Below are positions 1-63,879 of a stretch of 64,000 bases of DNA, one piece after another; position 1 is the stretch's first letter; each line of letters starts with the position of its first letter. The notes under the pieces were generated by a model. It worked only from the letters and a program-made list of their open reading frames with translations, searched no databases and had not been told where the DNA came from. Position numbers and translations under genes: made by a program. The stretch is from the sequence record OR699282.2, one strand, 5' to 3'.

Positions 1-138
1 AGTAGGCAGAGGAAGTCTGCCGTACTTTGTAGTTTCCAAGCTCCTTTTCCATTTTTCAAATTACATCAAATGTAATCAAAAGTAATCACGCAATGATTAG
101 TACTGAATTATTACTTTCACCTTAATTTCAATTACCCC

Positions 139-156
139 TTTACCCTTCGGGGTAAA
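139..156 (+). other. hairpin TTTACCC-TTCG-GGGTAAA
   Basis: Perfect 7-bp stem with C(UUCG)G loop. Confidence 0.6.
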
Positions 157-365
157 ATTCCATTACCCCTTGAGGCTCCAGCAAAAAGTTGGTTAGTACT
201 CCATCCTAAATCTCGATCCTAAAAATTTTGGAGTACCTATGAAATAAAAGTTGGATCTTCGAAAGTTGAAATTTACGTTGGGACGTTTATGATTTGTGGG
301 ATATAATGATGTTTGTAGTCGGGTAGTTCTCAAGAATATCAGTACTGAATGGTGAAAGAAAGTTA

Positions 366-393
366 TTGACATTATGATTCAGTACTGTATAAT
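366..393 (+). promoter_or_regulatory. sigma70 promoter
   Basis: TTGACA-16-TATAAT with AGTACT at 381. Confidence 0.8.
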
Positions 394-577
394 GTTCTAC
401 ATAGAGAGATGAGTTGCTGCGAACAATTCATTTACTCTACCTCCTGTCGTGAGACAGTACAGAAAAGATAGTTCCTCCTGTGGTGGTACATCTTTTTGAA
501 CCTCATATGAAAATCGTAATAACAGTACTGATATTAACAGAATGGTGTCAGTACTGATTTTAATCTAAATCATTATG

Positions 578-597
578 CCACCAGCACAAGCTGGTGG
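578..597. other. two inverted Chi sites forming a hairpin
   Basis: CCACCAGC-ACAA-GCTGGTGG; GCTGGTGG is the enterobacterial RecBCD Chi octamer. Confidence 0.75.
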
Positions 598-776
598 ATT
601 CCCTCTAACAGTATTCAGTACTACATGATAGTCTTCATCCTCCTAGGGTAACATAGTGAGGGCTATGATGGCAGTACTGAATACTCCCTTTCAAAAGATA
701 GATCTATGGTATAGTACTGACGGATTTTGGGTGTAGTTACCCTGGATGGATTTTGGGCGTAGATATGTCTAGCCCT

Positions 777-912
777 CCAGAAGTCTGGAAGTAAAGATGG
801 CTATCCATCTAGACGGCTAAACGGCTAGATTTCTGGATGGCTGGATGGCTAGACGTTTGGACGGCTAAACGGCTAGATGGTTACACGTCTGGAAGTATAG
901 ACGGCTAAATCA
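777..912. repeat. degenerate 8-bp tandem array, 17 units
   Basis: Units such as CTAGACGG, CTAAACGG, CTGGATGG, CTGGAAGT in exact 8-nt register. Confidence 0.85.
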
Positions 913-1059
913 AAATTTTATTTTGTTTTTTCCAATAGTTCCCCTACCGCGTGGGGATAGTTTCCCCGCAGTATCTGGTGTTAGATTTTTCTGAATCTGG
1001 AATCATTATCTTATAAACTGGGGGCAATGTCAACGACCTGGACGGATATTTTTAAAAAT

Positions 1060-1158
1060 TTTTTCAGTACTGAATTTTGGGCGTAACTATGCACCCGGTG
1101 GGCTGGAGTCTTTCTCGACTTGATGGAACTATTATACAGTACTGGAAAAATAAAGCAA
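1060..1158 (-). ncRNA. candidate small RNA cassette, CCCA-GGGTGC family copy 1
   Basis: TTGCTT-16-TATAAT (1158-1131), core AGCCCACCGGGTGC at 1104-1091, no ORF. Confidence 0.45.
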
Positions 1159-1188
1159 TACCCTGGAAGCAAAAAAGTTTTAATTAAT

Positions 1189-1280
1189 TTGCTTGCTATC
1201 CTGGGCCGGACTATGGTACTATAATTCAGTACTGAGAAAGTGCGTTTGCCTGCTAGGGTGCGGGAGTGTATCCTTTTTTT
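1189..1280 (+). ncRNA. candidate small RNA cassette copy 2 (degenerate)
   Basis: Core GCCTGCTAGGGTGC 1248-1261 then GGGAGTGTATCC; weak promoter TTGCTT-17-TATGGT. Confidence 0.3.
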
Positions 1281-1284
1281 ATAT

Positions 1285-1374
1285 CTTGAATTTTGGGCGT
1301 AATTCCGCACCCTCTGGGGTTTCCGCTTTCTCGTGTCTATGTAGTAATTATACGCTTTTTCAGGATCAAGTCAA
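1285..1374 (-). ncRNA. candidate small RNA cassette copy 3
   Basis: TTGACT-16-TATAAT (1374-1347), core ACCCCAGAGGGTGC 1320-1307. Confidence 0.4.
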
Positions 1375-1526
1375 TACCTAAAAACAAAATAATTGAAAAT
1401 AATTTAACGCGTTTAAACGGCCTGTAAAGCCCTGGAATGATTGGAATGGTGCAAATGTATAGCTTATGTGTATTAATGCGTTAGAATGCGTCTGAGGCCG
1501 TTTTTTGGGGTGTAGTAGTGATTTGG

Positions 1527-1619
1527 TTGATTCAGTACTGAATAATAGTACTCCTATATAGAAAGATAGTTCCCCTGGATTGATTCAGTACTGAATAATA
1601 GTACTCCTATATAGAAAGA
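1527..1619. repeat. 40-bp direct repeat, 2 copies, period 53
   Basis: TTGATTCAGTACTGAATAATAGTACTCCTATATAGAAAGA at 1527 and 1580. Confidence 0.85.
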
Positions 1620-1733
1620 AAACTATTTTAAAAGTATTTGTAGAAAGTACTTGCACCGTACTGATAAAAGCGTATAATGTTTTACATCGAGAGCGGGAAC
1701 ACTTCCCGCTACACTTTAAAAGAGATGAAAACG

Positions 1734-2096
1734 ATGGCGACTCAAATCAATAAAATCATGCTTAACCTGGTAAACTTCCGCGATGAGATGAAAGGTCTTC
1801 CGGCTGAAACTGTAAAAATTCACATTGCAGCTTATCGGGAACTTATTGCAATGTTGCCGCTTAAGCGTGAACAATACGCCGCTACTTTGATGCTGGATTC
1901 AATGATCCATATAATGATCTCAAATGATTTGACGATGGTTTATCAGTATATGGGCGAAAATTTCGCGGTGTGTAGTAAGCCAGTACCAGGGATGGCAACA
2001 ACTGAGGAATTGCACGGCTTAAACTTAAAACAAGATGCATGGGATAATATGCCTCGTTTCCTGGTATGGGCTGACAGTGGCAAAATTTACAAATAA
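1734..2096 (+). CDS. hypothetical early protein
   Basis: Promoter 1651, leader hairpin, SD, start moved from 1677 to MATQ. Confidence 0.8.
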   Translation: MATQINKIMLNLVNFRDEMKGLPAETVKIHIAAYRELIAMLPLKREQYAATLMLDSMIHIMISNDLTMVYQYMGENFAVCSKPVPGMATTEELHGLNLKQDAWDNMPRFLVWADSGKIYK

Positions 2097-2190
2097 GTTT
2101 AATAAAGTACTTGCATACTAAGTTAAAACAAGTATAATACTTTCTATCAGGTGGGGAATAGTTCCCCACTATAATTAAGAGATTAATTTT

Positions 2191-2424
2191 ATGAGTACTA
2201 TTTTAACTGTTTCTCAATCCGTTGCACTGACTGACCTATTAAACGCTTTAAGCCGTTGCACTGAGGTTGGCTTGTTTGATGTGGTTGACGTTGCACCGGA
2301 CGTTATTAATCATTTTTGTGATGCGATGGAAGAATGTAAGGAAGATGATAGCCGTATGATGGCGGTCGCCTTTGAGGAAGTACAGCCAGGTGAGATCAAA
2401 GGTTTACCAGTACTGAAAAAATAG
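2191..2424 (+). CDS. hypothetical early protein
   Basis: ORF behind promoter 2111 and leader hairpin. Confidence 0.8.
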   Translation: MSTILTVSQSVALTDLLNALSRCTEVGLFDVVDVAPDVINHFCDAMEECKEDDSRMMAVAFEEVQPGEIKGLPVLKK

Positions 2425-2506
2425 TACTTGCAAACTAAGTTTAAAAGCGTATAATGTTTTACATCAGGTGGGGAATAGTTCCCCACTATATAAGAGGATT
2501 AAAAAA

Positions 2507-2746
2507 ATGGCAAAATCAAAAATGTTCTTAGGTCACAAAAACAAAACTCATTGGAATGTAAGCCTGTGGATTAATAACGATGAGGGATTGTATCGGTTGG
2601 CCCTGGATTTTATTAACGACAACACTAATCGCAATGATGCGGCCCGTCATATGATGTTATTTTTAGAACAGACTGGACAAGATAAAACACCGGACGGATT
2701 CAAATATAGCACTACTGCGATCCGTGCGGCGATGGTTGGAATGTAA
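2507..2746 (+). CDS. conserved phage protein, GHKNKTHWNVSLWINN family; paralog of 4620
   Basis: SD GAGG, paralog shares identical 3' DNA. Confidence 0.85.
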   Translation: MAKSKMFLGHKNKTHWNVSLWINNDEGLYRLALDFINDNTNRNDAARHMMLFLEQTGQDKTPDGFKYSTTAIRAAMVGM

Positions 2747-2836
2747 TAGAATAGAATTTATTTAAAGTACTATCGCAAAAAATGATAGTACTTTATAATA
2801 GTGTTTTATTCATACACCAACGATAAGGGCAACAGC

Positions 2837-3103
2837 ATGAATATTAAGTATTTTGCGACGCGTGAACAAGCTCGGATCGCCGCACGCCAGGACGGGGCAA
2901 CGTTTAAAGATATGGGCGTACAATCGGAACGTGGTAAACGTTGGGCCATTGTAAAGCGTAGTACCGCCAGATCATTACAGTACTGGTTAGCGGCCTTAAA
3001 AAGTCCCGATAGTGTATCGCGTCGAGTGGTAGAAATAAAGCTCGACCGAAAGGGCAACCGCGTGACCGTGTACCGTACTAAAAAGATTGCAGTACTTGAA
3101 TAA
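2837..3103 (+). CDS. hypothetical protein, paralog of 16016
   Basis: Shared motifs FATRExAR..FKDMG..RWA and DRKGNRVTVY. Confidence 0.8.
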   Translation: MNIKYFATREQARIAARQDGATFKDMGVQSERGKRWAIVKRSTARSLQYWLAALKSPDSVSRRVVEIKLDRKGNRVTVYRTKKIAVLE

Positions 3104-3190
3104 AAAGTACTTGCAAACTAAGTTTAAAAGCGTATAATGTTTTACATCGAGAGCGGGAACACTTCCCGCCTATAACCTGGAGTAATAAAA

Positions 3191-3421
3191 ATGACTAATA
3201 TGTATATGACTGAAGTTAAAACCGTAAAAGATACTACCACAAATAAAGTTACTTACTTACAGCGGATCTGTGGTGTATGGCAACGTATCAGCAAATCAAA
3301 GTACTTTAAATTAACATCATATGCAAACCGTTCGGATTCATTCAGTACTGAAATAAAAGGTAATAAAGTACACCAATATGGCACTTATTATTATTATAGC
3401 CTGGACGCGATTGCAGTATAA
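3191..3421 (+). CDS. hypothetical early protein
   Basis: Promoter 3111, SD GGAG. Confidence 0.8.
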   Translation: MTNMYMTEVKTVKDTTTNKVTYLQRICGVWQRISKSKYFKLTSYANRSDSFSTEIKGNKVHQYGTYYYYSLDAIAV

Positions 3422-3451
3422 GCAGTTTACAAATCTTTACAATTGCCGGTA

Positions 3452-3535
3452 TTGACTTATTTTGTCAGTACTGGCATAATGTATTCATTGGCAGATAAGC
3501 CGTAGCCCATAGGGTGCGGGAGTGTATCTATAGAA
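3452..3535 (+). ncRNA. candidate small RNA cassette copy 4
   Basis: TTGACT-17-CATAAT, core AGCCCATAGGGTGC 3504-3517, GGGAGTGTATCT. Confidence 0.5.
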
Positions 3536-3544
3536 AAATTAGTT

Positions 3545-3624
3545 TAGTATAGTTACAATTGTGCACCCGGTGGGTTAGCTGTTGTCATGTGGTATATTAT
3601 GCCAGTACTTGATAATGCTGTCAA
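3545..3624 (-). ncRNA. candidate small RNA cassette copy 5 (convergent with copy 4)
   Basis: TTGACA-17-CATAAT (3624-3596), core AACCCACCGGGTGC 3576-3563. Confidence 0.5.
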
Positions 3625-3705
3625 TACTTTTTTTTACTATTCAGTACTGAAAACTATTTTTAAAAAGTACTTGCAAACTATGTTTAAAGGCGTATAATGT
3701 TTTAC

Positions 3706-3780
3706 ATCAGGACGGGGAACGAAATAAGTAACTTCCCGTTAAGTAGCCCAGGAGTAAGGCACACGAAAAACTCCCCTGAT
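3706..3780 (+). ncRNA. candidate three-way-junction RNA, copy 1
   Basis: Behind promoter 3671; ATCAGG/CCTGAT closing stem, ACGGG/CCCGT and GGAG/CTCC arms; no ORF before the next promoter at 3789. Confidence 0.5.
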
Positions 3781-3848
3781 AAAATAGTTTGACAAATGTT
3801 TTTAAAAGCGTATAATACTTACATCAACTACTGAATGAGGGTTACAAA

Positions 3849-4537
3849 ATGAAAACTATCACTACTACTACTTTCGTTATGGATTTTTCTGAATTGAACG
3901 CAGAACAAAAAACGTCAGCTATCGAACTGGTTCGGGAACGTGAAAAAAACTCAAACGACATTTTTCTGAATTGAACGCAGAACAAAAAACGTCAGCTATC
4001 GAACTGGTTCGGGAACGTGAAAAAAACTCAAACGACAATTATTTTTCTGAAAGTGAAATTGAATACTATAAAGAAACAGTACTACCGGAATATGGCATTA
4101 ATGACGCTGAAATACAATTCAGTGGTTTTTGGTCCCAGGGTGACGGTGCATCAATCAGTACTGACCACGTTGACGCAGTGAAGTTTTTACGCAAGGTAAG
4201 AGCATTAACTAAGTATCGCTCAATCCGTCACTTGCTGAATGAAGATGATTTGGCGATGAGTGTAAAGCGTTCGCACTCCCACTACTCGCATGAGAATACT
4301 GTAAGCGGGTACATTGAATCGGCTTACACTGATTTAACCGCAAAACAAGAAACGTTAGTTAATGAGCTTGAGGAACTACTCACTGAAACTATTCGTGAAT
4401 TGTCCCGCAAGTTGTACCGTGATTTAGAGAATGCATATGAGGATCAATTCACTACTGAAAACATTACGGCACTGATTGAGGGTAACGAGTATCAATTCAA
4501 TGTTATTGATGGCGTAGTGGAATCAATCGAATATTAA
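3849..4537 (+). pseudogene. FSGFWSQGDGA-motif phage/plasmid protein, frameshifted by a 77-bp tandem duplication
   Basis: ATG 3849 with SD GAGG; 3884-3960 repeated at 3961-4037; reading stops at ..NDIFLN*, rest is in ORF 3971-4537. Confidence 0.65.
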
Positions 4538-4619
4538 TTTAAAAAGTACTTGTTTAAAGGCGTATAATACTTTATATCGAGGCGGGGAGTGGTTCCCCGC
4601 TCAAACGAGGATTAAAAAA

Positions 4620-4859
4620 ATGGCTAGTACTAAAACTTACAACGGGCACAAAAACAAAACTCATTGGAATGTAAGCCTTTGGATTAATAACGGTGAGTCA
4701 TTGTATCGGCTTGCTCAAAGTTGCATCGCACAAAGTAGAACTAAAGATATTGCAGCGGAATGTATGTACCGCAGATTAAAAGCCAACGGTACTACTACAA
4801 CGCCGGACGGATTCAAATATAGCACTACTGCGATCCGTGCGGCGATGGTTGGAATGTAA
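4620..4859 (+). CDS. conserved phage protein, paralog of 2507
   Basis: GHKNKTHWNVSLWINN and TPDGFKYSTTAIRAAMVGM identical. Confidence 0.85.
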   Translation: MASTKTYNGHKNKTHWNVSLWINNGESLYRLAQSCIAQSRTKDIAAECMYRRLKANGTTTTPDGFKYSTTAIRAAMVGM

Positions 4860-4916
4860 TATTCAGTACTGAGATAATGGCGGGTAATAGTTCCCGCCTT
4901 TACTGAGGGTTATCTA

Positions 4917-5204
4917 ATGAGTAAAGTAATAAAGTACAATGTGTTAAGCAAATCATTGTCTATCAGTGAATGCACCGATGGTTTTTGGATGTACGATGAA
5001 ACGCGTGGCATGAATTTAGCTATGCGTGCAAAAACTGCTGAGGCGGCGTATATTCAAGCACTGGAATACTACCAGGAACGTTTAAAGGAAGTAGAAGAAG
5101 ATTATAAAAGCCTCAAAGCGAAAGTAGATCATTTCGTCGGTCAATTCGTGGAAGACAACGACGAGGACGGGCACTACTGCGACCGTTGCGGATCTTACAG
5201 TTAA
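4917..5204 (+). CDS. hypothetical protein
   Basis: ORF with SD GAGG. Confidence 0.8.
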   Translation: MSKVIKYNVLSKSLSISECTDGFWMYDETRGMNLAMRAKTAEAAYIQALEYYQERLKEVEEDYKSLKAKVDHFVGQFVEDNDEDGHYCDRCGSYS

Positions 5205-5221
5205 GTACTGAGGATTATCTA

Positions 5222-5425
5222 ATGAGTGATTTAATCGACCGCATCAAAGAGCTTGAAGAAAAAGAATTGCAGTTGATCGGGTTACGGAATAAAGTATTCC
5301 ATGATTTAGGTGGCTTTATTAATGCCTGGGATAGTGGCGATCCTGATGCGTTACCTGCTAACCGCCAGGCGATGATCAATGATGTGCGTGGTGTCTTTGA
5401 GTATGTTTTAAAGCAATTAAATTAA
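5222..5425 (+). CDS. hypothetical protein
   Basis: SD GAGG, start moved to MSDLI. Confidence 0.75.
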   Translation: MSDLIDRIKELEEKELQLIGLRNKVFHDLGGFINAWDSGDPDALPANRQAMINDVRGVFEYVLKQLN

Positions 5426-5511
5426 AAAAGTACTTGCAATTAGTTTTCAGTACTGTATAATGGTTTACATCAAAGGGAGAAATGGTTCTCCCTGGTAATG
5501 AGGAAAATAAA

Positions 5512-5733
5512 ATGGCAAATATCACTACTCTTTCCCAACTGGAAGCACTGGTTAAATCTATGCGGGAACATGCCGACAAAATCGGCGTACAAGATCCAGC
5601 CGTTTGCTTCTGCGACGAATTGAATGATGATACCCTGGTAATAGCAGAAGTCCAGGACGTTTCTAACTATTCCTCGCGTTACACTGGCGGCGTAGCAAAT
5701 AAAGGTGACTTCTGTTTATACCTTACAAAATAA
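5512..5733 (+). CDS. hypothetical early protein
   Basis: Promoter 5434, leader hairpin, SD GAGG. Confidence 0.8.
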   Translation: MANITTLSQLEALVKSMREHADKIGVQDPAVCFCDELNDDTLVIAEVQDVSNYSSRYTGGVANKGDFCLYLTK

Positions 5734-5764
5734 CAACGCGGGGAGATAATAACTCCCCGTTACT

Positions 5765-5868
5765 TTTTCAGTACTGAATCATTTAATAGACGGATCTCGG
5801 CACCCGGTGGGTTAGTGACTGTTTCGTCTTGATGTAGTAATTATGCCAGTACTGGATGCACTTGTCAA
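5765..5868 (-). ncRNA. candidate small RNA cassette copy 6
   Basis: TTGACA-17-CATAAT (5868-5840), GAC-GAAACA-GTC hairpin, core AACCCACCGGGTGC 5813-5800. Confidence 0.5.
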
Positions 5869-5975
5869 CAACTATTTTTCAAATACTTTTTATTAAAATA
5901 CTTGCTAATAGTTTTTAAACGCGTATAATGTTTTGCATAGGGGAGCGGTTCCCCTGGTAACTAAGGAATAAGAAA

Positions 5976-6212
5976 ATGCTTGAACAAATCAAATCAACGT
6001 CTGCTAATGTAACGGGAACGGTATCACACTTTATTGGTGATGAATCGCGGGGCGTTCCCTATTGTGCTGTACATGTAAACACTGAGGGTAACTACTGGTT
6101 TACGGTTTACGGATCATATTCATTTGGACGGCCAGGGCATCAAAAAATTCTGGATAAAGTACAGCCAACGGGTAAAAATATCACGGCTGAAATGTTTTAT
6201 AAAAAATCATAA
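5976..6212 (+). CDS. hypothetical early protein
   Basis: Promoter 5902, SD AAGG. Confidence 0.8.
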   Translation: MLEQIKSTSANVTGTVSHFIGDESRGVPYCAVHVNTEGNYWFTVYGSYSFGRPGHQKILDKVQPTGKNITAEMFYKKS

Positions 6213-6296
6213 AGTACTTGATAATAGTTTTTAGTACTGTATAATATTTTACATAGCACGGGGGAGCGGTTCCCCCTGGTAACTAAGGATAATCAA

Positions 6297-6596
6297 ATGA
6301 AAATTGCAATCATCGCCCTGGCTTTATCTGTTTCCTCTTTCGCTGTTAATGCGTCGTTAGATGTGAGTAGTGAAAAATTCATTCAGTGCACTGTTGCGAT
6401 GACCAATGAAAGTACGGGCGAGATTGTTTTAAAGGATTTAGAGATCCAGCCACAAGCATTTAAAAACGGGCCGTTCCATGAAGAAGACGAAAACGGTAGC
6501 ACAACCATTTACTATGATGCCAGTACTAAACGCGGTTCGGTCACGGTTATGGATACTGAGAAAGTAACTCATACAGGCGTTATTAATTGCCGTTGA
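6297..6596 (+). CDS. hypothetical exported protein
   Basis: N-terminus MKIAIIALALSVSSFAVNA looks like a Sec signal peptide; two Cys. Confidence 0.75.
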   Translation: MKIAIIALALSVSSFAVNASLDVSSEKFIQCTVAMTNESTGEIVLKDLEIQPQAFKNGPFHEEDENGSTTIYYDASTKRGSVTVMDTEKVTHTGVINCR

Positions 6597-6617
6597 TTGA
6601 TACTACGGGGTAACATC

Positions 6618-6848
6618 ATGACAGCACGAATAGTTTTACTTAACGAAAGCAGTACTACACAACTACTTAACGCCGTGCATTATGATATTGAAACGAGCGT
6701 TAATCTTATCAGTACTGTCGTACTGTTGGACACTGGAAAGGTCGCCAATGATAAAGCGATTGCAGGTATACTAACGGATCTTGAGCCTGGTAGCAGTGCA
6801 CCAATAACGTTAAATGGTAAAGTGTTTAACATTTTACTTACTGATTAA
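6618..6848 (+). CDS. hypothetical protein
   Basis: ORF followed by terminator. Confidence 0.7.
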   Translation: MTARIVLLNESSTTQLLNAVHYDIETSVNLISTVVLLDTGKVANDKAIAGILTDLEPGSSAPITLNGKVFNILLTD

Positions 6849-6854
6849 GTACAT

Positions 6855-6876
6855 AGCCCACCTGGTGGGCTTTTTT
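6855..6876 (+). terminator. intrinsic terminator
   Basis: AGCCCAC-CTG-GTGGGCT then T-tract. Confidence 0.85.
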
Positions 6877-6965
6877 GTTTTTGTAGTATCGTAGTACTGA
6901 GATACTTTGAAAATAGTTTTAAAAAAGTAGTTGACATTACCGCAGAAAAGCGTAGAATGTATTAC

Positions 6966-7038
6966 ATCAAGACGGGGAGCACTAAGTAGACCGCCAGTAA
7001 GTCGAACGAAAAACTGGACACGTCGAGAAAACTTTGAT
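6966..7038 (+). ncRNA. structured leader, variant of the three-way-junction RNA
   Basis: ATCAAG/TTTGAT closing stem, shared TAAGTAG and CCAG-TAAG-N4-ACGAAAAA-CTGG modules. Confidence 0.4.
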
Positions 7039-7081
7039 ACACTAATAAACGTAAACTAAACTTTAATTGAGGATTTATAAA

Positions 7082-7564
7082 ATGGCTAATGTAAAATCAT
7101 TCATCAAAGCACTGGTAGCAAATGAAACTAACGTCGCGGCTGAGATCCTGGCTGAACTGGATAACGATACCATGAAAGCGGTACGCAATAATTTTAACAT
7201 CGCGTACAGTACTGCGAAAGAACTACAAGCAAATAAAGCGGCAGAAATTGAAGCGGCAAAGGCGGCCCGTGAAGCAGAACTACAAGCAACAATCGAAAGT
7301 ATTCAGGCGGCAGTAGTTGGATTGGATCTGGAAGTAGTTACAGAGATGGCACAAAAAGCCCTGGCGGTTAAGTATGGGGAAGACAAGCCAGAAGTAAAAG
7401 CCAAAAAATGGATTCAGGAACGCGTAGCGGTAGTACTGGACAACGGGGAAGAATATCTGATTCCGGTGCGTGGTAACTGTATTGCGGTAGTACTGGACGC
7501 GATTAACTCCAGTGGTATGACTCGCGAGGAATGGATCGAAGCTCATCGCAAAGTTGAAGCATAA
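7082..7564 (+). CDS. H-NS/StpA-like protein (diverged)
   Basis: Helical N-terminus, Ala/Glu-rich central helix, C-terminus LDNGEEYLIPVRGNCIAVVLDAINSSGMTREEW aligns by eye to H-NS [34 protein letters not shown]. Confidence 0.6.
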   Translation: MANVKSFIKALVANETNVAAEILAELDNDTMKAVRNNFNIAYSTAKELQANKAAEIEAAKAAREAELQATIESIQAAVVGLDLEVVTEMAQKALAVKYGEDKPEVKAKKWIQERVAVVLDNGEEYLIPVRGNCIAVVLDAINSSGMTREEWIEAHRKVEA

Positions 7565-7585
7565 CAATTAAAGTACTGAATCACT

Positions 7586-7612
7586 AGCCCACCTTAAACG
7601 GTGGGCTTTTTT
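7586..7612 (+). terminator. intrinsic terminator
   Basis: AGCCCACC-TTAAAC-GGTGGGCT then T-tract. Confidence 0.85.
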
Positions 7613-7849
7613 GTGTTTATCGTTTACCAGGCCACCAGCACCGCCTAGAAACGATTCTAACGCATTAAACTGATTATCTGATGCATTGCCCTAGCTGGTG
7701 GCGTTAAGGTCGTTGTAATGCGATTGAGAGCGTTTAAAGTATTTTGCAAAAAGTAATAAAAAGTACTTGCACGATTAAGAGATTAGCGTATAATGTTTTA
7801 CATCGAGAGGGGGAAACGGTTCTCCTTCCAAATCAAAGGAATCAAAACA

Positions 7850-8077
7850 ATGGCTATTATCATTACTCGCGTATCTGGTACTACTGGCAACGAACAAGTA
7901 GTTGCAGTCATTACCAACAAGGAAGGTGCGGAATTGCAAAATGCAATGAATACCTGGGCCGTTAATGAGTTCGGTCAGTGGGCAAGTGTAGCATACATTG
8001 AAACCTATCAAGTGCCGTCGATTAGTTTAACTGATTTGGGCGTTGAGCGTATCCTTTGCCTGGATGAATTAAATTAA
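7850..8077 (+). CDS. hypothetical early protein
   Basis: Promoter 7767, SD AAGGA. Confidence 0.8.
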   Translation: MAIIITRVSGTTGNEQVVAVITNKEGAELQNAMNTWAVNEFGQWASVAYIETYQVPSISLTDLGVERILCLDELN

Positions 8078-8162
8078 AAAAGTACTTGCAAAGTAAATCG
8101 AATAAAGTATAATACATTACATCAAGGGGAGAAATGATTCTCCCCACTACAAGGAAACTAAT

Positions 8163-8306
8163 ATGAAAACTTGTCAATGTGGTCAGAAATCTATTACTGG
8201 TTTAAAGCGGGGCGTTGCTCTTTGCCAGTACCATTATAATTTACAAGTATGGGGTAAAGAATGGGCCGACCAGGTGGAAGCAGCAAAGAAAGCAAAAAGT
8301 AAGTAA
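8163..8306 (+). CDS. small Cys-containing protein, 47 aa
   Basis: MKTCQCG..LCQYH; promoter 8086 and SD AAGGA; below the ORF track cutoff. Confidence 0.7.
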   Translation: MKTCQCGQKSITGLKRGVALCQYHYNLQVWGKEWADQVEAAKKAKSK

Positions 8307-8397
8307 AAATATTATCACAGTACTATTGACATAGTTTGATAGTACTGGCATAATAGATTTTATCAAAACGACACATATTAATTTAAGGAATACCAAA

Positions 8398-8721
8398 ATG
8401 GCTAAAACTATCATCAACACCGTTTCCCTGGCTGCAATCCGTGCAATCAATGTTGACGGTAAACGTTGGACTGATTCATATGGCAATACTTATCATTCTT
8501 GTCATGTAAGCGTTGAACTGGATAACGGTTTGAATGATCTGGCGGTTGAATCATTTACTTATGGCTATGAAGATGCATATCAACAAACGGCGTTTGATCT
8601 CTTAAAGGAATCAGTAGACGGGCTTGATACTGTTGAAACCTCCCTTACTCGTTTATGTAATGATTTGTCTATCCCGTTGCATTGTACTGTACAGAATGTT
8701 AAACGTAAAAAAGATCTTTAA
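8398..8721 (+). CDS. hypothetical protein, paralog of 15606
   Basis: RWTDSxGNTYHSC..FTYGY..VKRKKD shared. Confidence 0.85.
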   Translation: MAKTIINTVSLAAIRAINVDGKRWTDSYGNTYHSCHVSVELDNGLNDLAVESFTYGYEDAYQQTAFDLLKESVDGLDTVETSLTRLCNDLSIPLHCTVQNVKRKKDL

Positions 8722-8801
8722 TTAGCTTTACTTTATGCAGATACTTTGATATAGTGTCTGCATAGGGGAAAGAAATTAAATTAACTTAAGAGGATAGTAT
8801 A

Positions 8802-9071
8802 ATGAAAAATATCAGTACTTTAATCGATGCAGGTACACATGTTCGTCGGTCTATGGTTACAACCAGTACTACAAAACAAGTAGCAAGCGGTTATCTTGTA
8901 TTTGTGCACGATGGAAAACTCCTGGAACGTTCAATCAATTTTGATGTTAAAAACAATTGCCGTTTTATTATCTTTAAGCGTGAACAATATAAAATCGATT
9001 TACCAGCGAAGCCCATAAGCGGGGCGTACAACGTGCAATCATTGTTTGAGCGTCAACCATACACCTATTAA
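8802..9071 (+). CDS. hypothetical protein
   Basis: SD GAGG. Confidence 0.75.
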   Translation: MKNISTLIDAGTHVRRSMVTTSTTKQVASGYLVFVHDGKLLERSINFDVKNNCRFIIFKREQYKIDLPAKPISGAYNVQSLFERQPYTY

Positions 9072-9122
9072 TCAAAACATCGTTAGCGGTCGATTCAGGC
9101 CGCTTATATTGGGGATTATACC

Positions 9123-9395
9123 ATGAACGTTAATCAAGTACTGAATGAGATCGAAAGCATCATTAAACCGATGAAGCGTACTGATGCTATGTTAACACCG
9201 GAAGAATGCCGCCTTTATGAGCGTTACAGCGTCGAACAAGTCCAGGCAATGGCTATGGCTACCCCAGCCGTTAAACCGCCTGAGAATGCGTTACAGGACG
9301 TTACAGGGGATTATATCATTAATCCAGTACTAGGGAAGATGGCTGCAATCACCGAAGATCAACAAGACTACTTAAGCCAGTACTTAAAAGGTTAA
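9123..9395 (+). CDS. hypothetical protein
   Basis: SD GGGG. Confidence 0.7.
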   Translation: MNVNQVLNEIESIIKPMKRTDAMLTPEECRLYERYSVEQVQAMAMATPAVKPPENALQDVTGDYIINPVLGKMAAITEDQQDYLSQYLKG

Positions 9396-9400
9396 TTAAT

Positions 9401-9610
9401 ATGCTTACTGTACAGGATAAGATCGACATCTTAAAGGTTAATATGTATGTGATTGATGCAGTACCTGGTAAAGTATTTGCATACGATGACACTACTGTAA
9501 GCAATTTCTACTATAGCCAGGACGTGGGGGATCTTTCTGTACAGTCGGTTATTGAAAACGTAGTTAATGCAGCGTATGAGCATTTACTTTCAAATAGTAC
9601 TTGCAATTAG
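9401..9610 (+). CDS. hypothetical protein
   Basis: Follows 9123 closely. Confidence 0.7.
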   Translation: MLTVQDKIDILKVNMYVIDAVPGKVFAYDDTTVSNFYYSQDVGDLSVQSVIENVVNAAYEHLLSNSTCN

Positions 9611-9679
9611 TTTTTAAACGCGTATAATGTTTTACATGAAGGGGAGAAATGATTCTCCCCACTAATTAAGGAATATGAA

Positions 9680-9826: not shown

Positions 9827-9908
9827 TACTTGCAATTAGTTTTTAGTACTGTATAATAGTTTACATGAAGGGGAAAACGTTCCCCTTACACCTAACGAGG
9901 AAAGTATA

Positions 9909-10629: not shown

Positions 10630-10638
10630 AAAAAGTGG

Positions 10639-12005: not shown

Positions 12006-12011
12006 GATTAT

Positions 12012-60769: not shown

Positions 60770-61291
60770 ATGTCGAAGAAGGATGCTTCGAAAAAACATT
60801 CAGTACATTTTAGTACTGGTAAAGATAACTGGACAACTCCAAAAGATTTCTTTGAAGAGTTAGATGAGTTATGGGGATTTACGCTTGATGCTGCTTGTGT
60901 TGATGAGACTGCATTATGTGAGAATTATTTTACACCAAATGATGATTCTCTTTCACAGGATTGGGGAAAGAATATAGTTTGGTTGAACCCTCCATATAGT
61001 GATTTGAAAACATGGTTATCTAAAGCAGTAGATGCGTATAATAAAGGAGCAACTGTATTAATTCTTGTACCATCAAGAACGGATACTATAGCCTTTCAGG
61101 ATTATGCTGCGAAAGTTTGTGATTGTATTTGTTTTATTAAGGGAAGGTTACGATTTGGTATCCCAGAAGAACCAGAGAAGAAAACAGATTCAGCACCATT
61201 TCCTTCGTGTCTGATAGTACTGGATAAGTACTTAACCACTGCTAAAATCAATTATCTTAAATCTCTTGGATTGGTGATGAAGAATTTATGA
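60770..61291 (+). CDS. phage DNA N6-adenine methyltransferase (Dam-type family)
   Basis: DNWTTP..FTLDAA..WLNPPYS..LVPSRTDT..FIKGRLRF. Confidence 0.9.
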   Translation: MSKKDASKKHSVHFSTGKDNWTTPKDFFEELDELWGFTLDAACVDETALCENYFTPNDDSLSQDWGKNIVWLNPPYSDLKTWLSKAVDAYNKGATVLILVPSRTDTIAFQDYAAKVCDCICFIKGRLRFGIPEEPEKKTDSAPFPSCLIVLDKYLTTAKINYLKSLGLVMKNL

Positions 61292-61821
61292 AAGAAACAT
61301 GCGTATTAACTTTTGGACGTGTTAATCCCGTACATCGTGGACATGGTTTAGTTTTTGAAAAGGCCAAAACATTACAAGAACAGTACAATGCTGATTTAAA
61401 AATATATCTAAGCACCAGTACTGACAATATAAAAAACCCACTCCCACCTGAACTAAAAATGTATTATACAGAGGGATTTTATCCTTCAGTGCAAGAGAAC
61501 ATCTACACAGAAGACAATCTGTTTGATATAATGAGAGAACTGGATGGAAAGTACTTAGATGTTCTTTTCATATGTGGTTCTGACCGTATTGATTCTTTTC
61601 AAAAAACTCTTGACATGTACAATGGTAAGTTGTATAATTTTTGTAGTATAAAAGTAATTCAAGCAGGTATTGACCGTAATGTAAGTCAATATAGCTCAAC
61701 ACAAATGCGTAACTTCGCAAAAAATGAAGATTTTGATAGTTTTCGTGAGTTTTTACCTGGAAATGACGAGAACTTAAAAATACAATTATTTGAAGACGTT
61801 ATAAAATACATGAGGAAATAA
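61288..61821 (+). CDS. HxGH nucleotidyltransferase (cytidyltransferase-like)
   Basis: TFGRVNPVHRGH, ICGSDR, SSTQMR. Confidence 0.85.
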   Translation: MKETCVLTFGRVNPVHRGHGLVFEKAKTLQEQYNADLKIYLSTSTDNIKNPLPPELKMYYTEGFYPSVQENIYTEDNLFDIMRELDGKYLDVLFICGSDRIDSFQKTLDMYNGKLYNFCSIKVIQAGIDRNVSQYSSTQMRNFAKNEDFDSFREFLPGNDENLKIQLFEDVIKYMRK

Positions 61822-61823
61822 TT

Positions 61824-62117
61824 ATGTCAGTACTGTTCAAAACCAATCCAGTACTTTGGGATCAAAATGAGCAATCAGGATTTCGTTCCATCCATGTTGA
61901 ATACAAAGGTAATACTGTAGTTGCAATTATTGCTAACAAAACTCTAGGAAACTGGACTGCACAGGTTGTTCCTATGGGATATTCTTACACATCTGATGAG
62001 GTTCAATTCCTGGCTGAACTATATCGTCAAGTGCCGTTTATCATTAATGTACTAGAAGGTAATGATACATTATCACATGCAGATGTGATTAATTTTCTTG
62101 GAAACTTGCATGTGTGA
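61824..62117 (+). CDS. hypothetical protein
   Basis: Coupled ORF. Confidence 0.75.
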   Translation: MSVLFKTNPVLWDQNEQSGFRSIHVEYKGNTVVAIIANKTLGNWTAQVVPMGYSYTSDEVQFLAELYRQVPFIINVLEGNDTLSHADVINFLGNLHV

Positions 62118-62397
62118 TGAAATAAATCTTACAGGATATTTTTTACAAGAATCAATGATTAAATTTAGTGATAAATTTTCAGTACTGGATGGTATCGAAA
62201 TGTGGCATGTCAAACCACTGTTCCACACTTTCAGTAAAGAGCACAAAATGTTATTGACTGAAGCGAGTAAATCAAATAACATATGTGAAATCAAAATTGG
62301 TGTAAATGTCTATAAAGGGATGGTTATCTTTTTTGACAATAACAGCAACTACTTTTATATTGTTAAGGAGCATTACGTTGACAAATACAAATACTAA
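62110..62397 (+). CDS. hypothetical protein
   Basis: ATG overlaps the previous stop. Confidence 0.7.
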   Translation: MCDEINLTGYFLQESMIKFSDKFSVLDGIEMWHVKPLFHTFSKEHKMLLTEASKSNNICEIKIGVNVYKGMVIFFDNNSNYFYIVKEHYVDKYKY

Positions 62398-62992
62398 TAC
62401 ATACTTCCGTTATCTTCGCTTAGGTCTTTCCCTACGTCCGATCCGTGGAAAGTGCGATTCACTCGCTGACCTTGACTATGCATATGCATTACATCATGAA
62501 GGTGTACAGTATGTATTGGGTGATTATGGTGAATTTGAAGAAACAAATGACAGTACTGGAATTAATGCTGGTGTAGAAAATCTTAACAACATTGCTAACA
62601 GTTCTCGCCATGACATTGTGTTACAGATTCAAAACTTTATTGAGCAGCACACAGGTAAACGTGTTTGGTGCTATGTCGGTACTGATGCACAAATGTCAAT
62701 TTCATTCGGTAACGATGAAGGATATGTTGCACAGCTTATTATGGATTTTGAATCTGAAGAGAAGTTTTTAGAATTCAAAGAAAAGATTATTCAGTCACTT
62801 GTTGATATGGGTATCCCCGAAGATAAAATGCCAGAAGTTCAAAACATTGATGAATTTGTTTTGATTCCATCTGATGAGAAATATGATGCAATGTTTACTG
62901 CCCTTAATATTCCAGGAGTTATTGTGGAGTACTTTGATGATGGTGATGATAGTATCTATATCGATCTAGATGACGATGACGACGATGAATAA
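62378..62992 (+). CDS. acidic hypothetical protein
   Basis: TTG start behind AAGGAG; poly-Asp C-terminus. Confidence 0.8.
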   Translation: MTNTNTNTYFRYLRLGLSLRPIRGKCDSLADLDYAYALHHEGVQYVLGDYGEFEETNDSTGINAGVENLNNIANSSRHDIVLQIQNFIEQHTGKRVWCYVGTDAQMSISFGNDEGYVAQLIMDFESEEKFLEFKEKIIQSLVDMGIPEDKMPEVQNIDEFVLIPSDEKYDAMFTALNIPGVIVEYFDDGDDSIYIDLDDDDDDE

Positions 62993-62997
62993 TGTAC

Positions 62998-63026
62998 ATA
63001 GCCCGACATAAGTTCGGGCTATTTTT
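62998..63026 (+). terminator. intrinsic terminator
   Basis: ATAGCCCGA-CATAAGT-TCGGGCTAT then T-tract. Confidence 0.8.
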
Positions 63027-63038
63027 GTAAGGGGATAT

Positions 63039-63314
63039 ATGAATTATAAAGTTCTACAATATACATACAGTGTTTTGTTTGATTTACATCACAATGGAAG
63101 ATATCTCAATACAATACGAGAAAACACATTCACTCATACTATCTGGATTAATCACTTAATAATGATACGTGAATATTTTGTTAATAGTGAGATAATCATT
63201 CGTGGTAAAAAACAGAAGATAGAACAAGTTAATAGTTTTGGTGGTAAATTAGTACTATCATTTATAGATAGTAATACTAATGAAAGATATAGTATAGATT
63301 TGGTGGACATATGA
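63039..63314 (+). CDS. family C hypothetical protein
   Basis: MNYK..TY..L.DL start. Confidence 0.7.
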   Translation: MNYKVLQYTYSVLFDLHHNGRYLNTIRENTFTHTIWINHLIMIREYFVNSEIIIRGKKQKIEQVNSFGGKLVLSFIDSNTNERYSIDLVDI

Positions 63315-63577
63315 ATTATAAAGATTTCCTACTAACATACAAGATTATTCGAGATTTAGCACACGACAATGATAGCCCTAGTCTAGAAGACACATGCACT
63401 GAAATGATTCATACAATTCGTGGTAAGATTAAAAAAAAATTCAGTACTGTTATTATTGGTGATGACCATGCAGAATTTTCTGATATAATCATTAGACGTG
63501 ATGGTAAAGTTGAGGTTCAGTACTACACTGATTTTGGATTTACCAGTATTCCGTTGGAGATATTCCCTTGGGATTAA
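63311..63577 (+). CDS. family C hypothetical protein
   Basis: MNYK..TYKII.DL start. Confidence 0.7.
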   Translation: MNYKDFLLTYKIIRDLAHDNDSPSLEDTCTEMIHTIRGKIKKKFSTVIIGDDHAEFSDIIIRRDGKVEVQYYTDFGFTSIPLEIFPWD

Positions 63578-63879
63578 ATTTAAATGATATACAATTCACT
63601 TATAAGATCCTATATGATTTGTATGATGTATACCTTGTTAGTAACAAAATAGGTTCACATAACCCATACAAAGAACAACCATTTATTGATTTATATATTG
63701 AGTACTTAGATTCAGTAGGTGAATATATAAAAAAGAATTACAGTACTTTTATCGATGGAAATGATAAATTCGATTTCTATGGTGTGCAATCATATAATGG
63801 TATAATCCATGTTCAATTTCAGGAAATAACCGATAGGGGATTTATCGAGATTAAAGTTGTGAAGTTGGTGAATTTATAA
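63568..63879 (+). CDS. family C hypothetical protein
   Basis: LNDIQFTYKILYDL. Confidence 0.7.
   Translation: MGLNLNDIQFTYKILYDLYDVYLVSNKIGSHNPYKEQPFIDLYIEYLDSVGEYIKKNYSTFIDGNDKFDFYGVQSYNGIIHVQFQEITDRGFIEIKVVKLVNL

What the first reader, a model, noticed from the sequence alone, without database searches (positions are those of the whole stretch)
99..63800. Extreme over-representation of AGTACT, placed like an operator in early promoters
I counted 17 AGTACT in the first 1.7 kb, where under one is expected, and it recurs in coding DNA through the whole window. It is often extended to TTCAGTACTGAA (1063, 1531, 1584, 3641, 5767, 17759). In promoters it occupies two fixed slots: abutting the -35 (AAAAGTACTTGCA) and 15 nt after the -35 start (AGTACTG then the -10). 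The slots give dyads 20-24 bp apart (2766/2787, 5429/5449, 8319/8341, 9825/9845, 15944/15968). Phages usually deplete 6-bp palindromes. This points to a genome-wide self mark: a site for a phage DNA-binding protein, or a modified site that also switches early promoters off.
Basis: partly seen in the sequence, partly recalled or inferred. Interest (0 to 1): 0.8.

Follow-up and report, generated by a model that had tools for sequence, protein, structure and literature searches.

The report
Iterated AGTACT palindrome in jumbo phages
A clade of giant E. coli, Klebsiella and Cronobacter phages that has purged almost every other GC-containing palindrome keeps about a thousand evenly spaced copies of AGTACT, two of them locked into fixed positions in most early promoters; it looks like a phage-wide recognition site whose reader is still unknown.

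Summary
The window is the first 64 kb of Escherichia phage BAU.Micro_ELP-22 (373 kb, Asteriusvirus). AGTACT occurs 255 times against 17.5 expected, and 1,060 times against about 126 in the whole genome. It falls in all three reading frames and survives codon-preserving shuffles.

- **Site shape:** flanks are dyad-symmetric, giving a core of CAGTACTG up to TTCAGTACTGAA.
- **Promoters:** 33 of 37 sigma-70-type early promoters in the 21.3-kb terminal repeat carry the site abutting the -35, the -10, or both, 20 bp apart. A Klebsiella relative uses the same slots although its spacers differ.
- **Conservation:** terminal-repeat sites are conserved (92% against 74% background). Sites in the gene arrays turn over, yet density and unusually even spacing are maintained.
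- **Distribution:** every relative with a head protein at least 85% identical has the trait. Sister clades, PA5oct and an unrelated coliphage are depleted, and the host is at chance.
- **Exceptions:** two blocks (21.3-26.1 and 28.7-37.0 kb) lack the palindrome. The second holds AGTACA at the same density.

My best reading is a site for a dimeric, probably phage-encoded factor that acts as an operator at early promoters and gives genome-wide coverage elsewhere. Methylation by one of two orphan methyltransferases is the main rival. No reader was identified and I found no published description. The closest analogue is the cyanobacterial HIP1 palindrome.

The parts
99..63747 (.). 255 copies of AGTACT (core of CAGTACTG / TTCAGTACTGAA). 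162 lie fully inside + strand ORFs and 93 are intergenic.
   Evidence: flank symmetry
1..21279 (+). Left copy of the exact 21,279-bp direct terminal repeat. About 70 small early genes, 37 sigma-70-type promoters and 137 AGTACT sites (6.4 per kb).
5429..5462 (+). Example of a two-site promoter: AGTAC-TTGCAA (-35), a 14-nt variable spacer, then AGTACT-G-TATAAT (-10). The two sites are 20 bp apart.
9825..9858 (+). Two-site early promoter with sites at 9825 and 9845.
6213..6246 (+). Two-site early promoter with sites at 6213 and 6233.
8319..8355 (+). Variant two-site promoter, AGTACT-A-TTGACA ... AGTACT-GG-CATAAT, with sites 22 bp apart. The same type occurs at 11513/11535 and 19297/19319.
15944..16000 (+). 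Promoter with three sites (15944, 15968, 15995), upstream of the 131-aa gene that precedes the ParE-like gene.
1527..1619 (+). Two 40-nt direct repeats, each with two AGTACT sites 13 bp apart, in the non-coding left end of the terminal repeat.
21277..26071 (+). Palindrome-free block 1. It lies within a tandem array of 25 paralogous 65-90-aa genes (phrog_4148) that spans 21,506-27,255. GTAC density is below expectation.
28732..36999 (+). Palindrome-free block 2. AGTACT 0 and TGTACT 0, but AGTACA occurs 43 times (3 expected), in all frames and on the sense strand only. AGTACW density equals that of the flanking DNA.
60770..61291 (+). Phage-type Dam (PF05869) N6-adenine methyltransferase, 173 aa. 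One of two orphan methyltransferases and a candidate modifier of the site.

Best explanation
AGTACT is the invariant core of an 8-12-bp dyad-symmetric site, (TT)CAGTACTG(AA). A homodimeric sequence-specific factor recognises it on double-stranded DNA. That factor is probably encoded by the phage clade itself.

At early promoters, most of the roughly 37 sigma-70-type promoters in each terminal repeat carry the site in one or both of two fixed slots. One slot (-39 to -34) shares its last T with the -35 hexamer. The other (-19 to -14) abuts the -10. When both are present they are 20 bp apart, which is two helical turns, so they lie on the same face. Occupancy would compete with RNA polymerase, and the site would then work as an operator that turns early transcription down once the factor accumulates.

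Elsewhere, about 900 further copies are held at roughly one per 350 bp with unusually even spacing. They give the same factor, or a modification it depends on, continuous coverage of phage DNA, which is 12-30 times richer in the site than host DNA.

Shown: the enrichment, the symmetry, the slots, the conservation, the spacing and the clade distribution. Inferred: protein binding, repression rather than activation, and what the genome-wide coverage is for.
For: - Enrichment is 8- to 15-fold, falls in all frames and is robust to codon-preserving nulls.
- Flanks are symmetric: C..G 199 against 27 expected and G..C 4 against 27, with T-rich at -3/-4 mirrored by A-rich at +8/+9.
- 33 of 37 terminal-repeat promoters carry a site at fixed offsets.
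- A Klebsiella phage whose early proteins are only 33-74% identical keeps offsets -7 and -27 and the exact 20-bp spacing (19 cases), while its spacers differ.
- 55 of 56 intergenic sites, and 92 of 100 terminal-repeat sites, are conserved in UE-S1 against 74% background.
- Spacing is more even than random: CV 0.73-0.92 in 7 segments, and rank 2 of 174 and 2 of 45 among frequent 6-mers.
- Density is maintained at 25-45 sites per 21 kb in 11 diverged lineages, although only 36% of positions are shared.
- The trait is confined to one clade. Its relatives, an unrelated coliphage and the host lack it.
Against: - No DNA-binding protein was found. Pfam and PHROGs scans of terminal-repeat and neighbouring proteins found nothing, and the one structural candidate gave a poor model with no match.
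- Sites in the 37-53 kb gene arrays are not individually conserved (69% against 66% background). The evidence for selection there rests on density and spacing only.
- The slots could serve an activator, or be intrinsic promoter elements.
- Two conserved blocks do without the palindrome.
- Late genes also carry the site at 5-fold excess. That fits poorly with a simple repressor or roadblock.
Confidence: 0.4

Rival explanations
1. Methylation mark, as for HIP1. One of the phage's two orphan methyltransferases (Dam-type PF05869 or the compact C5 enzyme) modifies AGTACT or the embedded GTAC. The mark protects the roughly 1,000 sites from ScaI-type restriction. Through the two promoter slots, early promoter activity then depends on methylation state: fully methylated injected DNA against newly replicated DNA. 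This is compatible with the best explanation rather than exclusive of it.
For: - The genome purges nearly all other GC-containing palindromes: GCGC 0 against 293 expected, and 27 hexamers at 0-2 copies. An abundant palindrome therefore probably needs protection.
- AGTACT is avoided by PA5oct and by an unrelated coliphage, each with 1 site against 13-17 expected.
- Two orphan methyltransferases are present and conserved in the Klebsiella relative.
- HIP1 shows the same combination: a hyper-abundant conserved palindrome plus one Dam-type and one C5 orphan methyltransferase (PMC5861425, PMC4390886, PMC13756078).
Against: - The C5 enzyme is a DNMT3-like minimal domain of 286 aa, which suggests a short target.
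- A 51%-identical homolog sits in a phage that has almost no AGTACT.
- C-to-T decay products are not the dominant losses, and AGTATT and AATACT are not unusual.
- The specificity of the 173-aa Dam-type enzyme is unknown.
- Methylation alone does not explain why the site is enriched or evenly spaced.
Confidence: 0.3
2. Positive promoter element. AGTACT is bound by an activator, possibly injected with the DNA, or is an intrinsic extension of the -35 and -10 elements that makes early promoters strong. On this reading the copies in coding DNA are a separate phenomenon.
For: The slot positions are fixed relative to -35 and -10, and AGTACT-G-TATAAT places a TG next to the -10. Promoters with the weaker TTGCAA -35 carry the upstream site, while those with TTGACA mostly carry the downstream site.
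Against: - The same hexamer fills two different slots, and sometimes a third just after the -35.
- About 900 copies lie far from promoters, with symmetric flanks and no second promoter-like element nearby.
- A palindrome is not expected for an RNA polymerase contact.
Confidence: 0.1
3. Nuclease-attenuating or protective self-mark, working like Chi. A phage or host helicase-nuclease that degrades DNA is stopped or modulated at AGTACT. Being a palindrome, the site works from either direction. Phage DNA is therefore spared while host DNA is destroyed.
For: - Spacing is even and the largest gaps are short.
- Density is highest in both terminal repeats, that is, at the genome ends.
- The phage-to-host contrast is 12- to 30-fold, with the opposite contrast for GCGC.
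- The phage also accumulates genuine E. coli Chi, 39 copies against about 2 expected, with 9 in one orientation per terminal repeat.
Against: It does not explain the fixed promoter slots or the 98% conservation of intergenic sites. No cognate nuclease was identified. The density gradient equally follows gene class (early genes above late) and protein constraint.
Confidence: 0.1
4. No function: a mutational or repair drive. A very-short-patch-like repair system tied to a methyltransferase converts near-cognate words into AGTACT.
For: Array sites are not positionally conserved, and many structural-module sites turn over while density stays constant.
Against: - Near-cognates are not depleted: AATACT is at 1.19x and AGTATT at 1.58x.
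- Spacing is more even than random, whereas a drive predicts CV of 1 or more.
- Promoter sites sit at fixed slots and are almost perfectly conserved.
- No Vsr-like gene is annotated.
Confidence: 0.05
5. A host factor reads the site. The candidate is the nucleoid-occlusion protein SlmA, whose 12-bp site GTGAGTACTCAC has the same core.
For: The AGTACT core is shared (PMC3020112). The trait is restricted to phages of Enterobacteriaceae.
Against: SlmA needs G, T and a purine at half-site positions 1-3. Phage sites prefer C at position 3. SlmA-type half-sites number 10 and 12 against 28 and 24 expected, and there is no full site among 923.
Confidence: 0.03

Closest known systems
HIP1 (GCGATCGC), the highly iterated palindrome of cyanobacteria
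   Same: - A short palindrome, many-fold over-represented.
- Present in and between ORFs in all frames.
- Conserved above background in part of the genome.
- Non-random spacing.
- Confined to one clade.
- Two orphan methyltransferases, one Dam-type and one C5, in the same genomes.
- Function still unsettled (PMC5861425, PMC4390886, PMC13756078).
   Different: - This one is in a virus rather than a cell.
- It is a 6-bp core in a 34% GC genome that otherwise purges palindromes.
- It has fixed slots in promoters, whereas HIP1 showed no role in gene expression.
- Its spacing is locally even rather than periodic over 10-90 kb.
- Whether the methyltransferases target it is unknown.
Paired operator palindromes overlapping -35 and -10 (classical repressor control of phage early promoters)
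   Same: Dyad-symmetric sites at fixed positions over the core promoter, two helical turns apart, conserved while the spacer drifts.
   Different: The same site is repeated at about 37 promoters and about 900 non-promoter positions. No repressor was identified.
Genome-coating phage proteins that also switch early promoters: SPO1 TF1 and phi29 p6 (from my own knowledge, not checked here)
   Same: An abundant phage DNA-binding protein that prefers phage DNA, binds along the genome, and represses early promoters located near the genome ends or in a terminal redundancy.
   Different: As I recall, TF1 recognises hydroxymethyluracil DNA and p6 recognises bendability, not an exact hexamer. No homolog was found here.
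Chi and DNA uptake sequences (over-represented self-identifying words)
   Same: High density, roughly even coverage, and a large contrast with foreign DNA. The phage also carries real Chi in excess.
   Different: Those words are asymmetric and oriented. They are read by RecBCD or the uptake machinery and have no promoter role.
SlmA-binding site GTGAGTACTCAC
   Same: Identical central AGTACT (PMC3020112).
   Different: The flanks required by SlmA are under-represented at the phage sites.

Membership tests
Highly iterated palindrome (HIP1-like) | Palindrome many-fold over-represented against composition-aware nulls | tested here: met
   255 against 17.5 in the window and 1,060 against about 126 in the genome; survives codon shuffles
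Highly iterated palindrome (HIP1-like) | Occurs within and between ORFs regardless of frame | tested here: met
   Frames 60/43/59. Intergenic density 8.5 per kb, coding 3.1 per kb
Highly iterated palindrome (HIP1-like) | Sites conserved between genomes above background | tested here: inconclusive
   Met in the terminal repeat (92% against 74%) and in the head module (36% against 21%). Not met in the 37-53 kb arrays (69% against 66%)
Highly iterated palindrome (HIP1-like) | Non-random spacing along the genome | tested here: met
   CV 0.73-0.92 against about 0.98, and rank 2 among frequent 6-mers. This is local evenness, not long-range periodicity
Highly iterated palindrome (HIP1-like) | Cognate orphan methyltransferases recognise the motif or a sub-motif | not testable with these tools
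   Two orphan methyltransferases are present, but their specificity cannot be read from sequence
Repressor operator at early promoters | Dyad-symmetric site overlapping the core promoter at fixed positions | tested here: met
   Offsets -27 and -7 from TATAAT. 33 of 37 promoters carry a site. The same slots are used in a Klebsiella phage
Repressor operator at early promoters | A cognate DNA-binding protein encoded nearby or in the genome | tested here: not met
   No HTH, RHH or other DNA-binding domain was found among the proteins screened. The candidate model had no structural match. Only a fraction of about 700 proteins was screened.
Repressor operator at early promoters | Occupancy lowers transcription | not testable with these tools
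   Needs reporter assays or time-resolved RNA-seq
Target of a ScaI-type (AGTACT) modification enzyme | The site is modified in virion DNA | not testable with these tools
   Needs ScaI or RsaI digestion, or SMRT or Nanopore data
SlmA-binding site | G, T and a purine at half-site positions 1-3 flanking AGTACT | tested here: not met
   10 and 12 half-sites against 28 and 24 expected. 0 full sites among 923
Repair-driven (VSP-like) over-representation | Depletion of the near-cognate words that the repair system converts | tested here: not met
   AATACT at 1.19x and AGTATT at 1.58x; no neighbour linked by a transition is depleted
Chi-like nuclease-modulating word | Recognised by a helicase-nuclease, with an effect on degradation | not testable with these tools
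   Only the indirect features (density, coverage, enrichment toward the ends) are met

The most novel reading that the evidence does not exclude
The enterobacterial Rak2-like jumbo phages use a two-word sequence code to tell self from host. AGTACT is a positive mark: about 1,000 evenly spaced copies, read by a dedicated and so far unrecognised phage protein that also shuts off the early promoters in the terminal repeats. GCGC is a negative mark: 0 copies in the phage and about 7 per kb in the host. Together they would let a phage function act on host DNA while sparing its own unmodified genome. That would be a sequence-based alternative to the base hypermodification used by T4.
Probability: 0.15. 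Interest if true: 0.9.

Novelty: new variant of a known kind. Interest (0 to 1): 0.72.

Why it matters
Highly iterated palindromes are known from cyanobacterial chromosomes, where their function is still debated after 30 years. Here the same phenomenon appears in a virus with a 6-bp core that a commercial enzyme (ScaI) cuts, and with an added handle: fixed positions in about 37 early promoters. That makes it directly testable by restriction digest, methylome sequencing, oligonucleotide pull-down and promoter reporters.

If a reader protein exists, it would be a new global regulator or organiser of a jumbo-phage genome. It could also explain how these phages, which appear to rely on site avoidance rather than base modification, manage the early-to-middle switch and distinguish their DNA from the host's.

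On the practical side, the motif and the complete absence of GCGC are sharp sequence signatures for recognising this clade in metagenomes.

Tried and rejected
1. Host SlmA as reader. Rejected: the flanks SlmA requires are under-represented.
2. VSP-like repair drive. Near-cognates are not depleted and spacing is too even.
3. Codon or amino-acid artefact. All frames are used, and the enrichment survives synonymous and codon-order shuffles.
4. The palindrome-free blocks as strain-specific insertions. Rejected: they are conserved at 90-96% identity across the genus, and block 2 proteins are remote paralogs of the neighbouring array.
5. 'Opposite orientation' of the variant in block 1 as a polarity signal. 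Withdrawn: 5 of the 8 TGTACT copies are one homologous position copied through a tandem paralog array.
6. AGTACA as an actively maintained second site. It is not conserved above background anywhere. Part of the sense-strand asymmetry of variants follows from coding constraint: A4-to-T is conservative in all frames and T3-to-A is radical (my own reasoning).
7. A link to the clade's reported middle-promoter motif TGAAACG. There is none.
8. The C5 methyltransferase as an obvious AGTACT enzyme. It is a DNMT3-like minimal domain, and a homolog sits in a phage that lacks the site.
9. Hunt for a reader. Pfam and PHROGs scans of terminal-repeat proteins, of the 56-63 kb proteins and of the neighbours of the sigma factor found nothing. 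The 131-aa gene upstream of the ParE-like gene was tried as a Phd/YefM-type candidate: 47 homologs, AlphaFold pLDDT 72.7 and pTM 0.30, and no Foldseek match.
10. Literature. No paper in the library describes the motif in these phages.
11. Rfam. No hit in the window.

Full report
IDENTITY OF THE WINDOW. The window is identical to bases 1-64,000 of Escherichia phage BAU.Micro_ELP-22 (OR699282.2; 373,488 bp; genus Asteriusvirus, the PBECO4/121Q/G17 group of Rak2-like jumbo myoviruses). Nearly all plausible genes are on the + strand; the record also annotates a few short ORFs on the - strand. Bases 1-21,279 are repeated exactly at the right end of the genome, so the densest part of the finding is the left copy of a direct terminal repeat. 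It holds about 70 small genes, each with its own intergenic promoter. From 21.5 kb onward the genes are tightly packed arrays of paralogs of unknown function.

THE OBSERVATION. AGTACT occurs 255 times against 17.5 +/- 4.3 in dinucleotide-preserving shuffles, where the largest count was 28. With its overlapping words CAGTAC and GTACTG it is the most over-represented 6-mer. 162 copies lie inside ORFs, in frames 60/43/59. A synonymous-codon shuffle gives 50.6 +/- 6.2 and a codon-order shuffle gives 20.8 +/- 4.2. Low-order Markov expectations are 45 (order 2) and 98 (order 3). The order-4 value of 214 only restates that the nested 5-mers are themselves enriched. The listed coordinates are right, apart from one that is off by one. 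One correction matters: two blocks, 21,277-26,071 and 28,732-36,999, contain no copy at all.

ANATOMY OF THE SITE. The flanks are dyad-symmetric. Over the genome with one repeat copy (923 sites), C at -1 together with G at +6 occurs 199 times against 27 expected. The reverse combination, G..C, occurs 4 times against 27. T-rich positions at -3/-4 mirror A-rich positions at +8/+9. The recognised unit is therefore CAGTACTG, extending to TTCAGTACTGAA. This is what a homodimer reading double-stranded DNA would produce. No further conserved element lies within +/-14 nt of coding sites, and sites have no preferred position within genes.

PROMOTERS. The terminal repeat holds 37 sigma-70-type promoters: a -35 of TTGACA or TTGCAA, a spacer of 16-17 nt (18 in two cases) and a -10 of TATAAT. 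Each is followed by a conserved TTTACATC and a G/C hairpin before the ribosome-binding site. AGTACT starts exactly 27 nt (17 cases) or 7 nt (14 cases) before TATAAT.
- In 12 promoters it occupies only the -10-proximal slot.
- In 11 it occupies only the slot that shares its last T with the -35.
- In 7 it occupies both slots, 20-24 bp apart.
- In 3 it lies just after the -35.
- 4 promoters have none.
A Klebsiella Rak2-like phage (OU509535.1) has early proteins only 33-74% identical. It uses the same two offsets and the same 20-bp spacing (19 cases in 50 kb), while the spacer between the sites differs from promoter to promoter. Against UE-S1 (91% identical DNA), 55 of 56 intergenic sites are intact where 74% would be expected.

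GENOME-WIDE BEHAVIOUR. The whole genome has 1,060 copies against about 126 expected. Counts per 5 kb are 27-37 in each terminal repeat, 11-22 in the neighbouring early or middle arrays, and 4-14 in the replication and structural modules. The excess holds for genes on both strands, and even the sparse regions carry about 5 times the expected number.

Spacing is more even than random in all seven segments tested: CV 0.73-0.92 against a null near 0.98, with p < 0.05 in six. Largest gaps are shorter than expected. Among frequent 6-mers AGTACT ranks 2nd of 174 and 2nd of 45 for evenness, where the median CV is 1.09 and 1.01. The effect is weaker in the other genera (Fisher p = 0.03). Compositional heterogeneity or a simple mutational bias would give CV of 1 or more, so this points to selection for coverage.

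Positional conservation is uneven.
- In the terminal repeat, 92 of 100 sites are conserved (background 74%, p = 4e-6).
- In the 37-53 kb arrays, 40 of 58 are conserved (background 66%, not significant).
- In the head module, compared with 11 lineages at about 75% DNA identity, 86 of 237 site instances are conserved against 50.7 expected.
In that last comparison some sites are kept in 11 of 11 lineages and others in none, yet every lineage holds 25-45 sites per 21 kb. Density is maintained while many positions turn over.

PHYLOGENETIC EXTENT. AGTACT is the top palindrome in the Klebsiella phage, with 261, 121 and 113 copies per 50 kb against about 17 expected. The same holds for Cronobacter phage GAP32 (105 against 17) and for all 19 viral contigs whose major head protein is at least 85% identical. 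It is at or below expectation in the next clade out (head protein about 64% identical, GC 46-58%). It is depleted in Pseudomonas phage PA5oct (1 against 13) and in an unrelated 146-kb coliphage (1 against 17). A 50-kb sample of E. coli K-12 has 11 copies against 12.6 expected and no CAGTACTG.

The enriched clade is also an extreme palindrome-avoider. GCGC occurs 0 times against 293 expected in ELP-22 and 0 times in every enriched relative. 27 hexamer palindromes occur at most twice. AGTACT is the one large exception.

THE TWO PALINDROME-FREE BLOCKS. Both are conserved across the genus at 90-96% identity. In UE-S1 they hold only about the chance number of sites.

Block 1 lies inside a tandem array of 25 paralogs and is poor in GTAC altogether. 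Five of its eight TGTACT copies are one homologous position, which reads AGTACT in the paralogs just outside the block. Recent expansion from a site-poor founder is a sufficient explanation.

Block 2 is stranger.
- AGTACT and TGTACT are both absent, but AGTACA occurs 43 times against 3 expected.
- AGTACA falls in all three frames (15/13/13), with 41 copies in ORFs against 12.9 +/- 3.0 under synonymous shuffling.
- Position 6 is A in 43 of the 45 AGTACN words and never T.
- AGTACW density is 5.20 per kb inside the block and 5.44 per kb in the flanking array.
- AGTACA is not conserved above background anywhere.
- A milder sense-strand excess of AGTACA is seen in the flanking array and in the equivalent Klebsiella region.
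Either the palindromes of this block were all broken at the same position and the relics are now drifting, or AGTACA-rich DNA was never converted. I cannot decide between these, and the block remains unexplained. Part of the sense-strand asymmetry of other variants (AGTTCT, AGTTCA) does follow from coding constraint. A-to-T at position 4 is synonymous or conservative in every frame, whereas its mirror change is radical in every frame (my own reasoning from the genetic code).

WHO READS IT. The phage has two orphan methyltransferases. One is a 173-aa phage-type Dam (PF05869, window 60770-61291). The other is a 286-aa C5 enzyme (PF00145). The C5 enzyme aligns end to end with the compact DNMT3 catalytic domain, which argues for a short target. 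A 51%-identical homolog sits in the coliphage that has almost no AGTACT. The Dam-type enzyme has no solved relative. Both are conserved in the Klebsiella phage.

No DNA-binding domain turned up among the terminal-repeat proteins, which yielded only a DksA/TraR zinc finger, a GNAT, a ParE-like protein and DUFs. Nothing turned up among the proteins at 56-63 kb or next to the phage sigma factor either.

I recalled that Phd/YefM antitoxins bind GTAC-core hexamers, and a ParE-like gene sits at 16482-16736. On that lead I tested the syntenic upstream 131-aa gene. It has 47 homologs, but the AlphaFold model is weak (pTM 0.30) and has no structural match. The host protein SlmA shares the AGTACT core, but it needs G, T and a purine at the three flanking positions (PMC3020112). 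Such flanks are 2-3-fold under-represented, and no full SlmA site exists among the 923 sites.

INTERPRETATION. The symmetric flanks, the fixed promoter slots kept across genera, and the near-perfect conservation in the terminal repeat make a sequence-specific, dimeric reader of double-stranded DNA the most economical explanation. Two sites 20 bp apart, covering the -35 and abutting the -10, are where a repressor would sit. I therefore favour an operator role in turning early promoters down, with the genome-wide, evenly spaced copies giving the same factor or mark continuous coverage of phage DNA (confidence 0.4).

Methylation of the site by one of the orphan enzymes is the main rival and may well coexist with binding (0.3). 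It would explain how a genome that avoids almost every other palindrome can afford a thousand copies of a site that other phages avoid. Activation instead of repression, a Chi-like protective role, a functionless repair drive, and a host reader are less likely, for the reasons given under the rivals.

COMPARISON AND NOVELTY. The closest known phenomenon is HIP1 of cyanobacteria. It is a hyper-abundant, partly conserved, non-randomly spaced palindrome that accompanies one Dam-type and one C5 orphan methyltransferase, and its function is unresolved (PMC5861425, PMC4390886, PMC13756078). The present case differs in four ways: it is viral, it has a 6-bp core, it sits in a genome that otherwise purges palindromes, and it has a clear promoter role. 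I found no description of it in papers on PBECO4, 121Q, phAPEC6, EJP2, RaK2, GAP32, CBB or PA5oct, or in any paper holding the motif together with phage terms. The library is incomplete, so this is absence of evidence. I rate it a new variant of a known kind, of high interest because simple bench tests would settle it.

Noticed in passing
whole ELP-22 genome (L001-L008) and loci L018-L036: GCGC is completely absent: 0 against 293 expected in 352 kb, and 0 in all 19 relatives with a head protein at least 85% identical. The sister clade has 9-113 per locus and E. coli has about 7 per kb. 27 hexamer palindromes (GGATCC, GAGCTC, CTGCAG, CTCGAG, GTCGAC, CCATGG and others) occur 0-2 times against 8-32 expected. 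The GCGC taboo and the AGTACT excess arose in the same clade.
   Followed up: partly
window 578-597, 7632, 7694, 12027, 13490, 14758, 16829, 18238, 19817, 20039, 60026: The E. coli Chi site GCTGGTGG is strongly over-represented: 25 top-strand and 14 bottom-strand copies in the genome against about 1 expected for each. Nine top-strand copies lie in each terminal repeat. An inverted Chi pair (CCACCAGC-ACAA-GCTGGTGG) sits at 578-597, near the left end.
   Followed up: partly
window 28732-36999: The block has no AGTACT but 43 AGTACA (3 expected), on the sense strand only and in all frames. Its density equals that of AGTACW in the flanking DNA, and the sites are not conserved above background. AGTTCA (20 against 3) and TGTACA (11 against 3) are also enriched. 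The origin is unexplained.
   Followed up: partly
window 21506-27255: Tandem array of 25 overlapping paralogous genes of 65-90 aa (phrog_4148, unknown function). One further family member lies at 42199-42390.
   Followed up: partly
window 779-906: A run of 8-bp-period repeats (RRAYGGCT-like, for example GGATGGCT, AGACGGCT, AAACGGCT) in the non-coding left end of the terminal repeat. It is iteron-like and may be a replication or packaging element.
   Followed up: no
terminal-repeat intergenic regions, e.g. window 2140-2180, 5940-5965, 9860-9890: Almost every early promoter is followed by a conserved TTTACATC and then a G/C-rich hairpin (GGGGA...TCCCC) with no T-run, placed between the transcription start region and the ribosome-binding site. 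It looks like a shared 5' leader structure rather than a terminator.
   Followed up: no
window 16025-16736: A ParE-like toxin-domain gene (PF24732, 16482-16736) lies in the terminal repeat, with a syntenic 131-aa upstream gene. Both are conserved in the Klebsiella phage. The promoter of the upstream gene is the only one with three AGTACT sites.
   Followed up: partly
window 21271-21279 and genome 352190-352210: Both terminal-repeat junctions lie next to an AGTACTGAT. The repeat ends 3 nt after one, and the right copy starts 13 nt after another. This may be chance (the prior is about 0.1), and it depends on how the depositors defined the ends.
   Followed up: no
genome 280246-281106 (L006:30246-31106): Among solved structures, the phage C5 methyltransferase is closest over its full length to the DNMT3A/B/C catalytic domains (E about 1e-22), ahead of the bacterial M.HhaI and M.HaeIII.
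   Followed up: partly
window 59531-60210: A 680-bp stretch without a credible + strand ORF. It contains a strong intrinsic terminator (about 59563-59595), a bottom-strand Chi and G/C hairpins. There is no Rfam match, so it may be an unannotated RNA or a regulatory region.
   Followed up: partly
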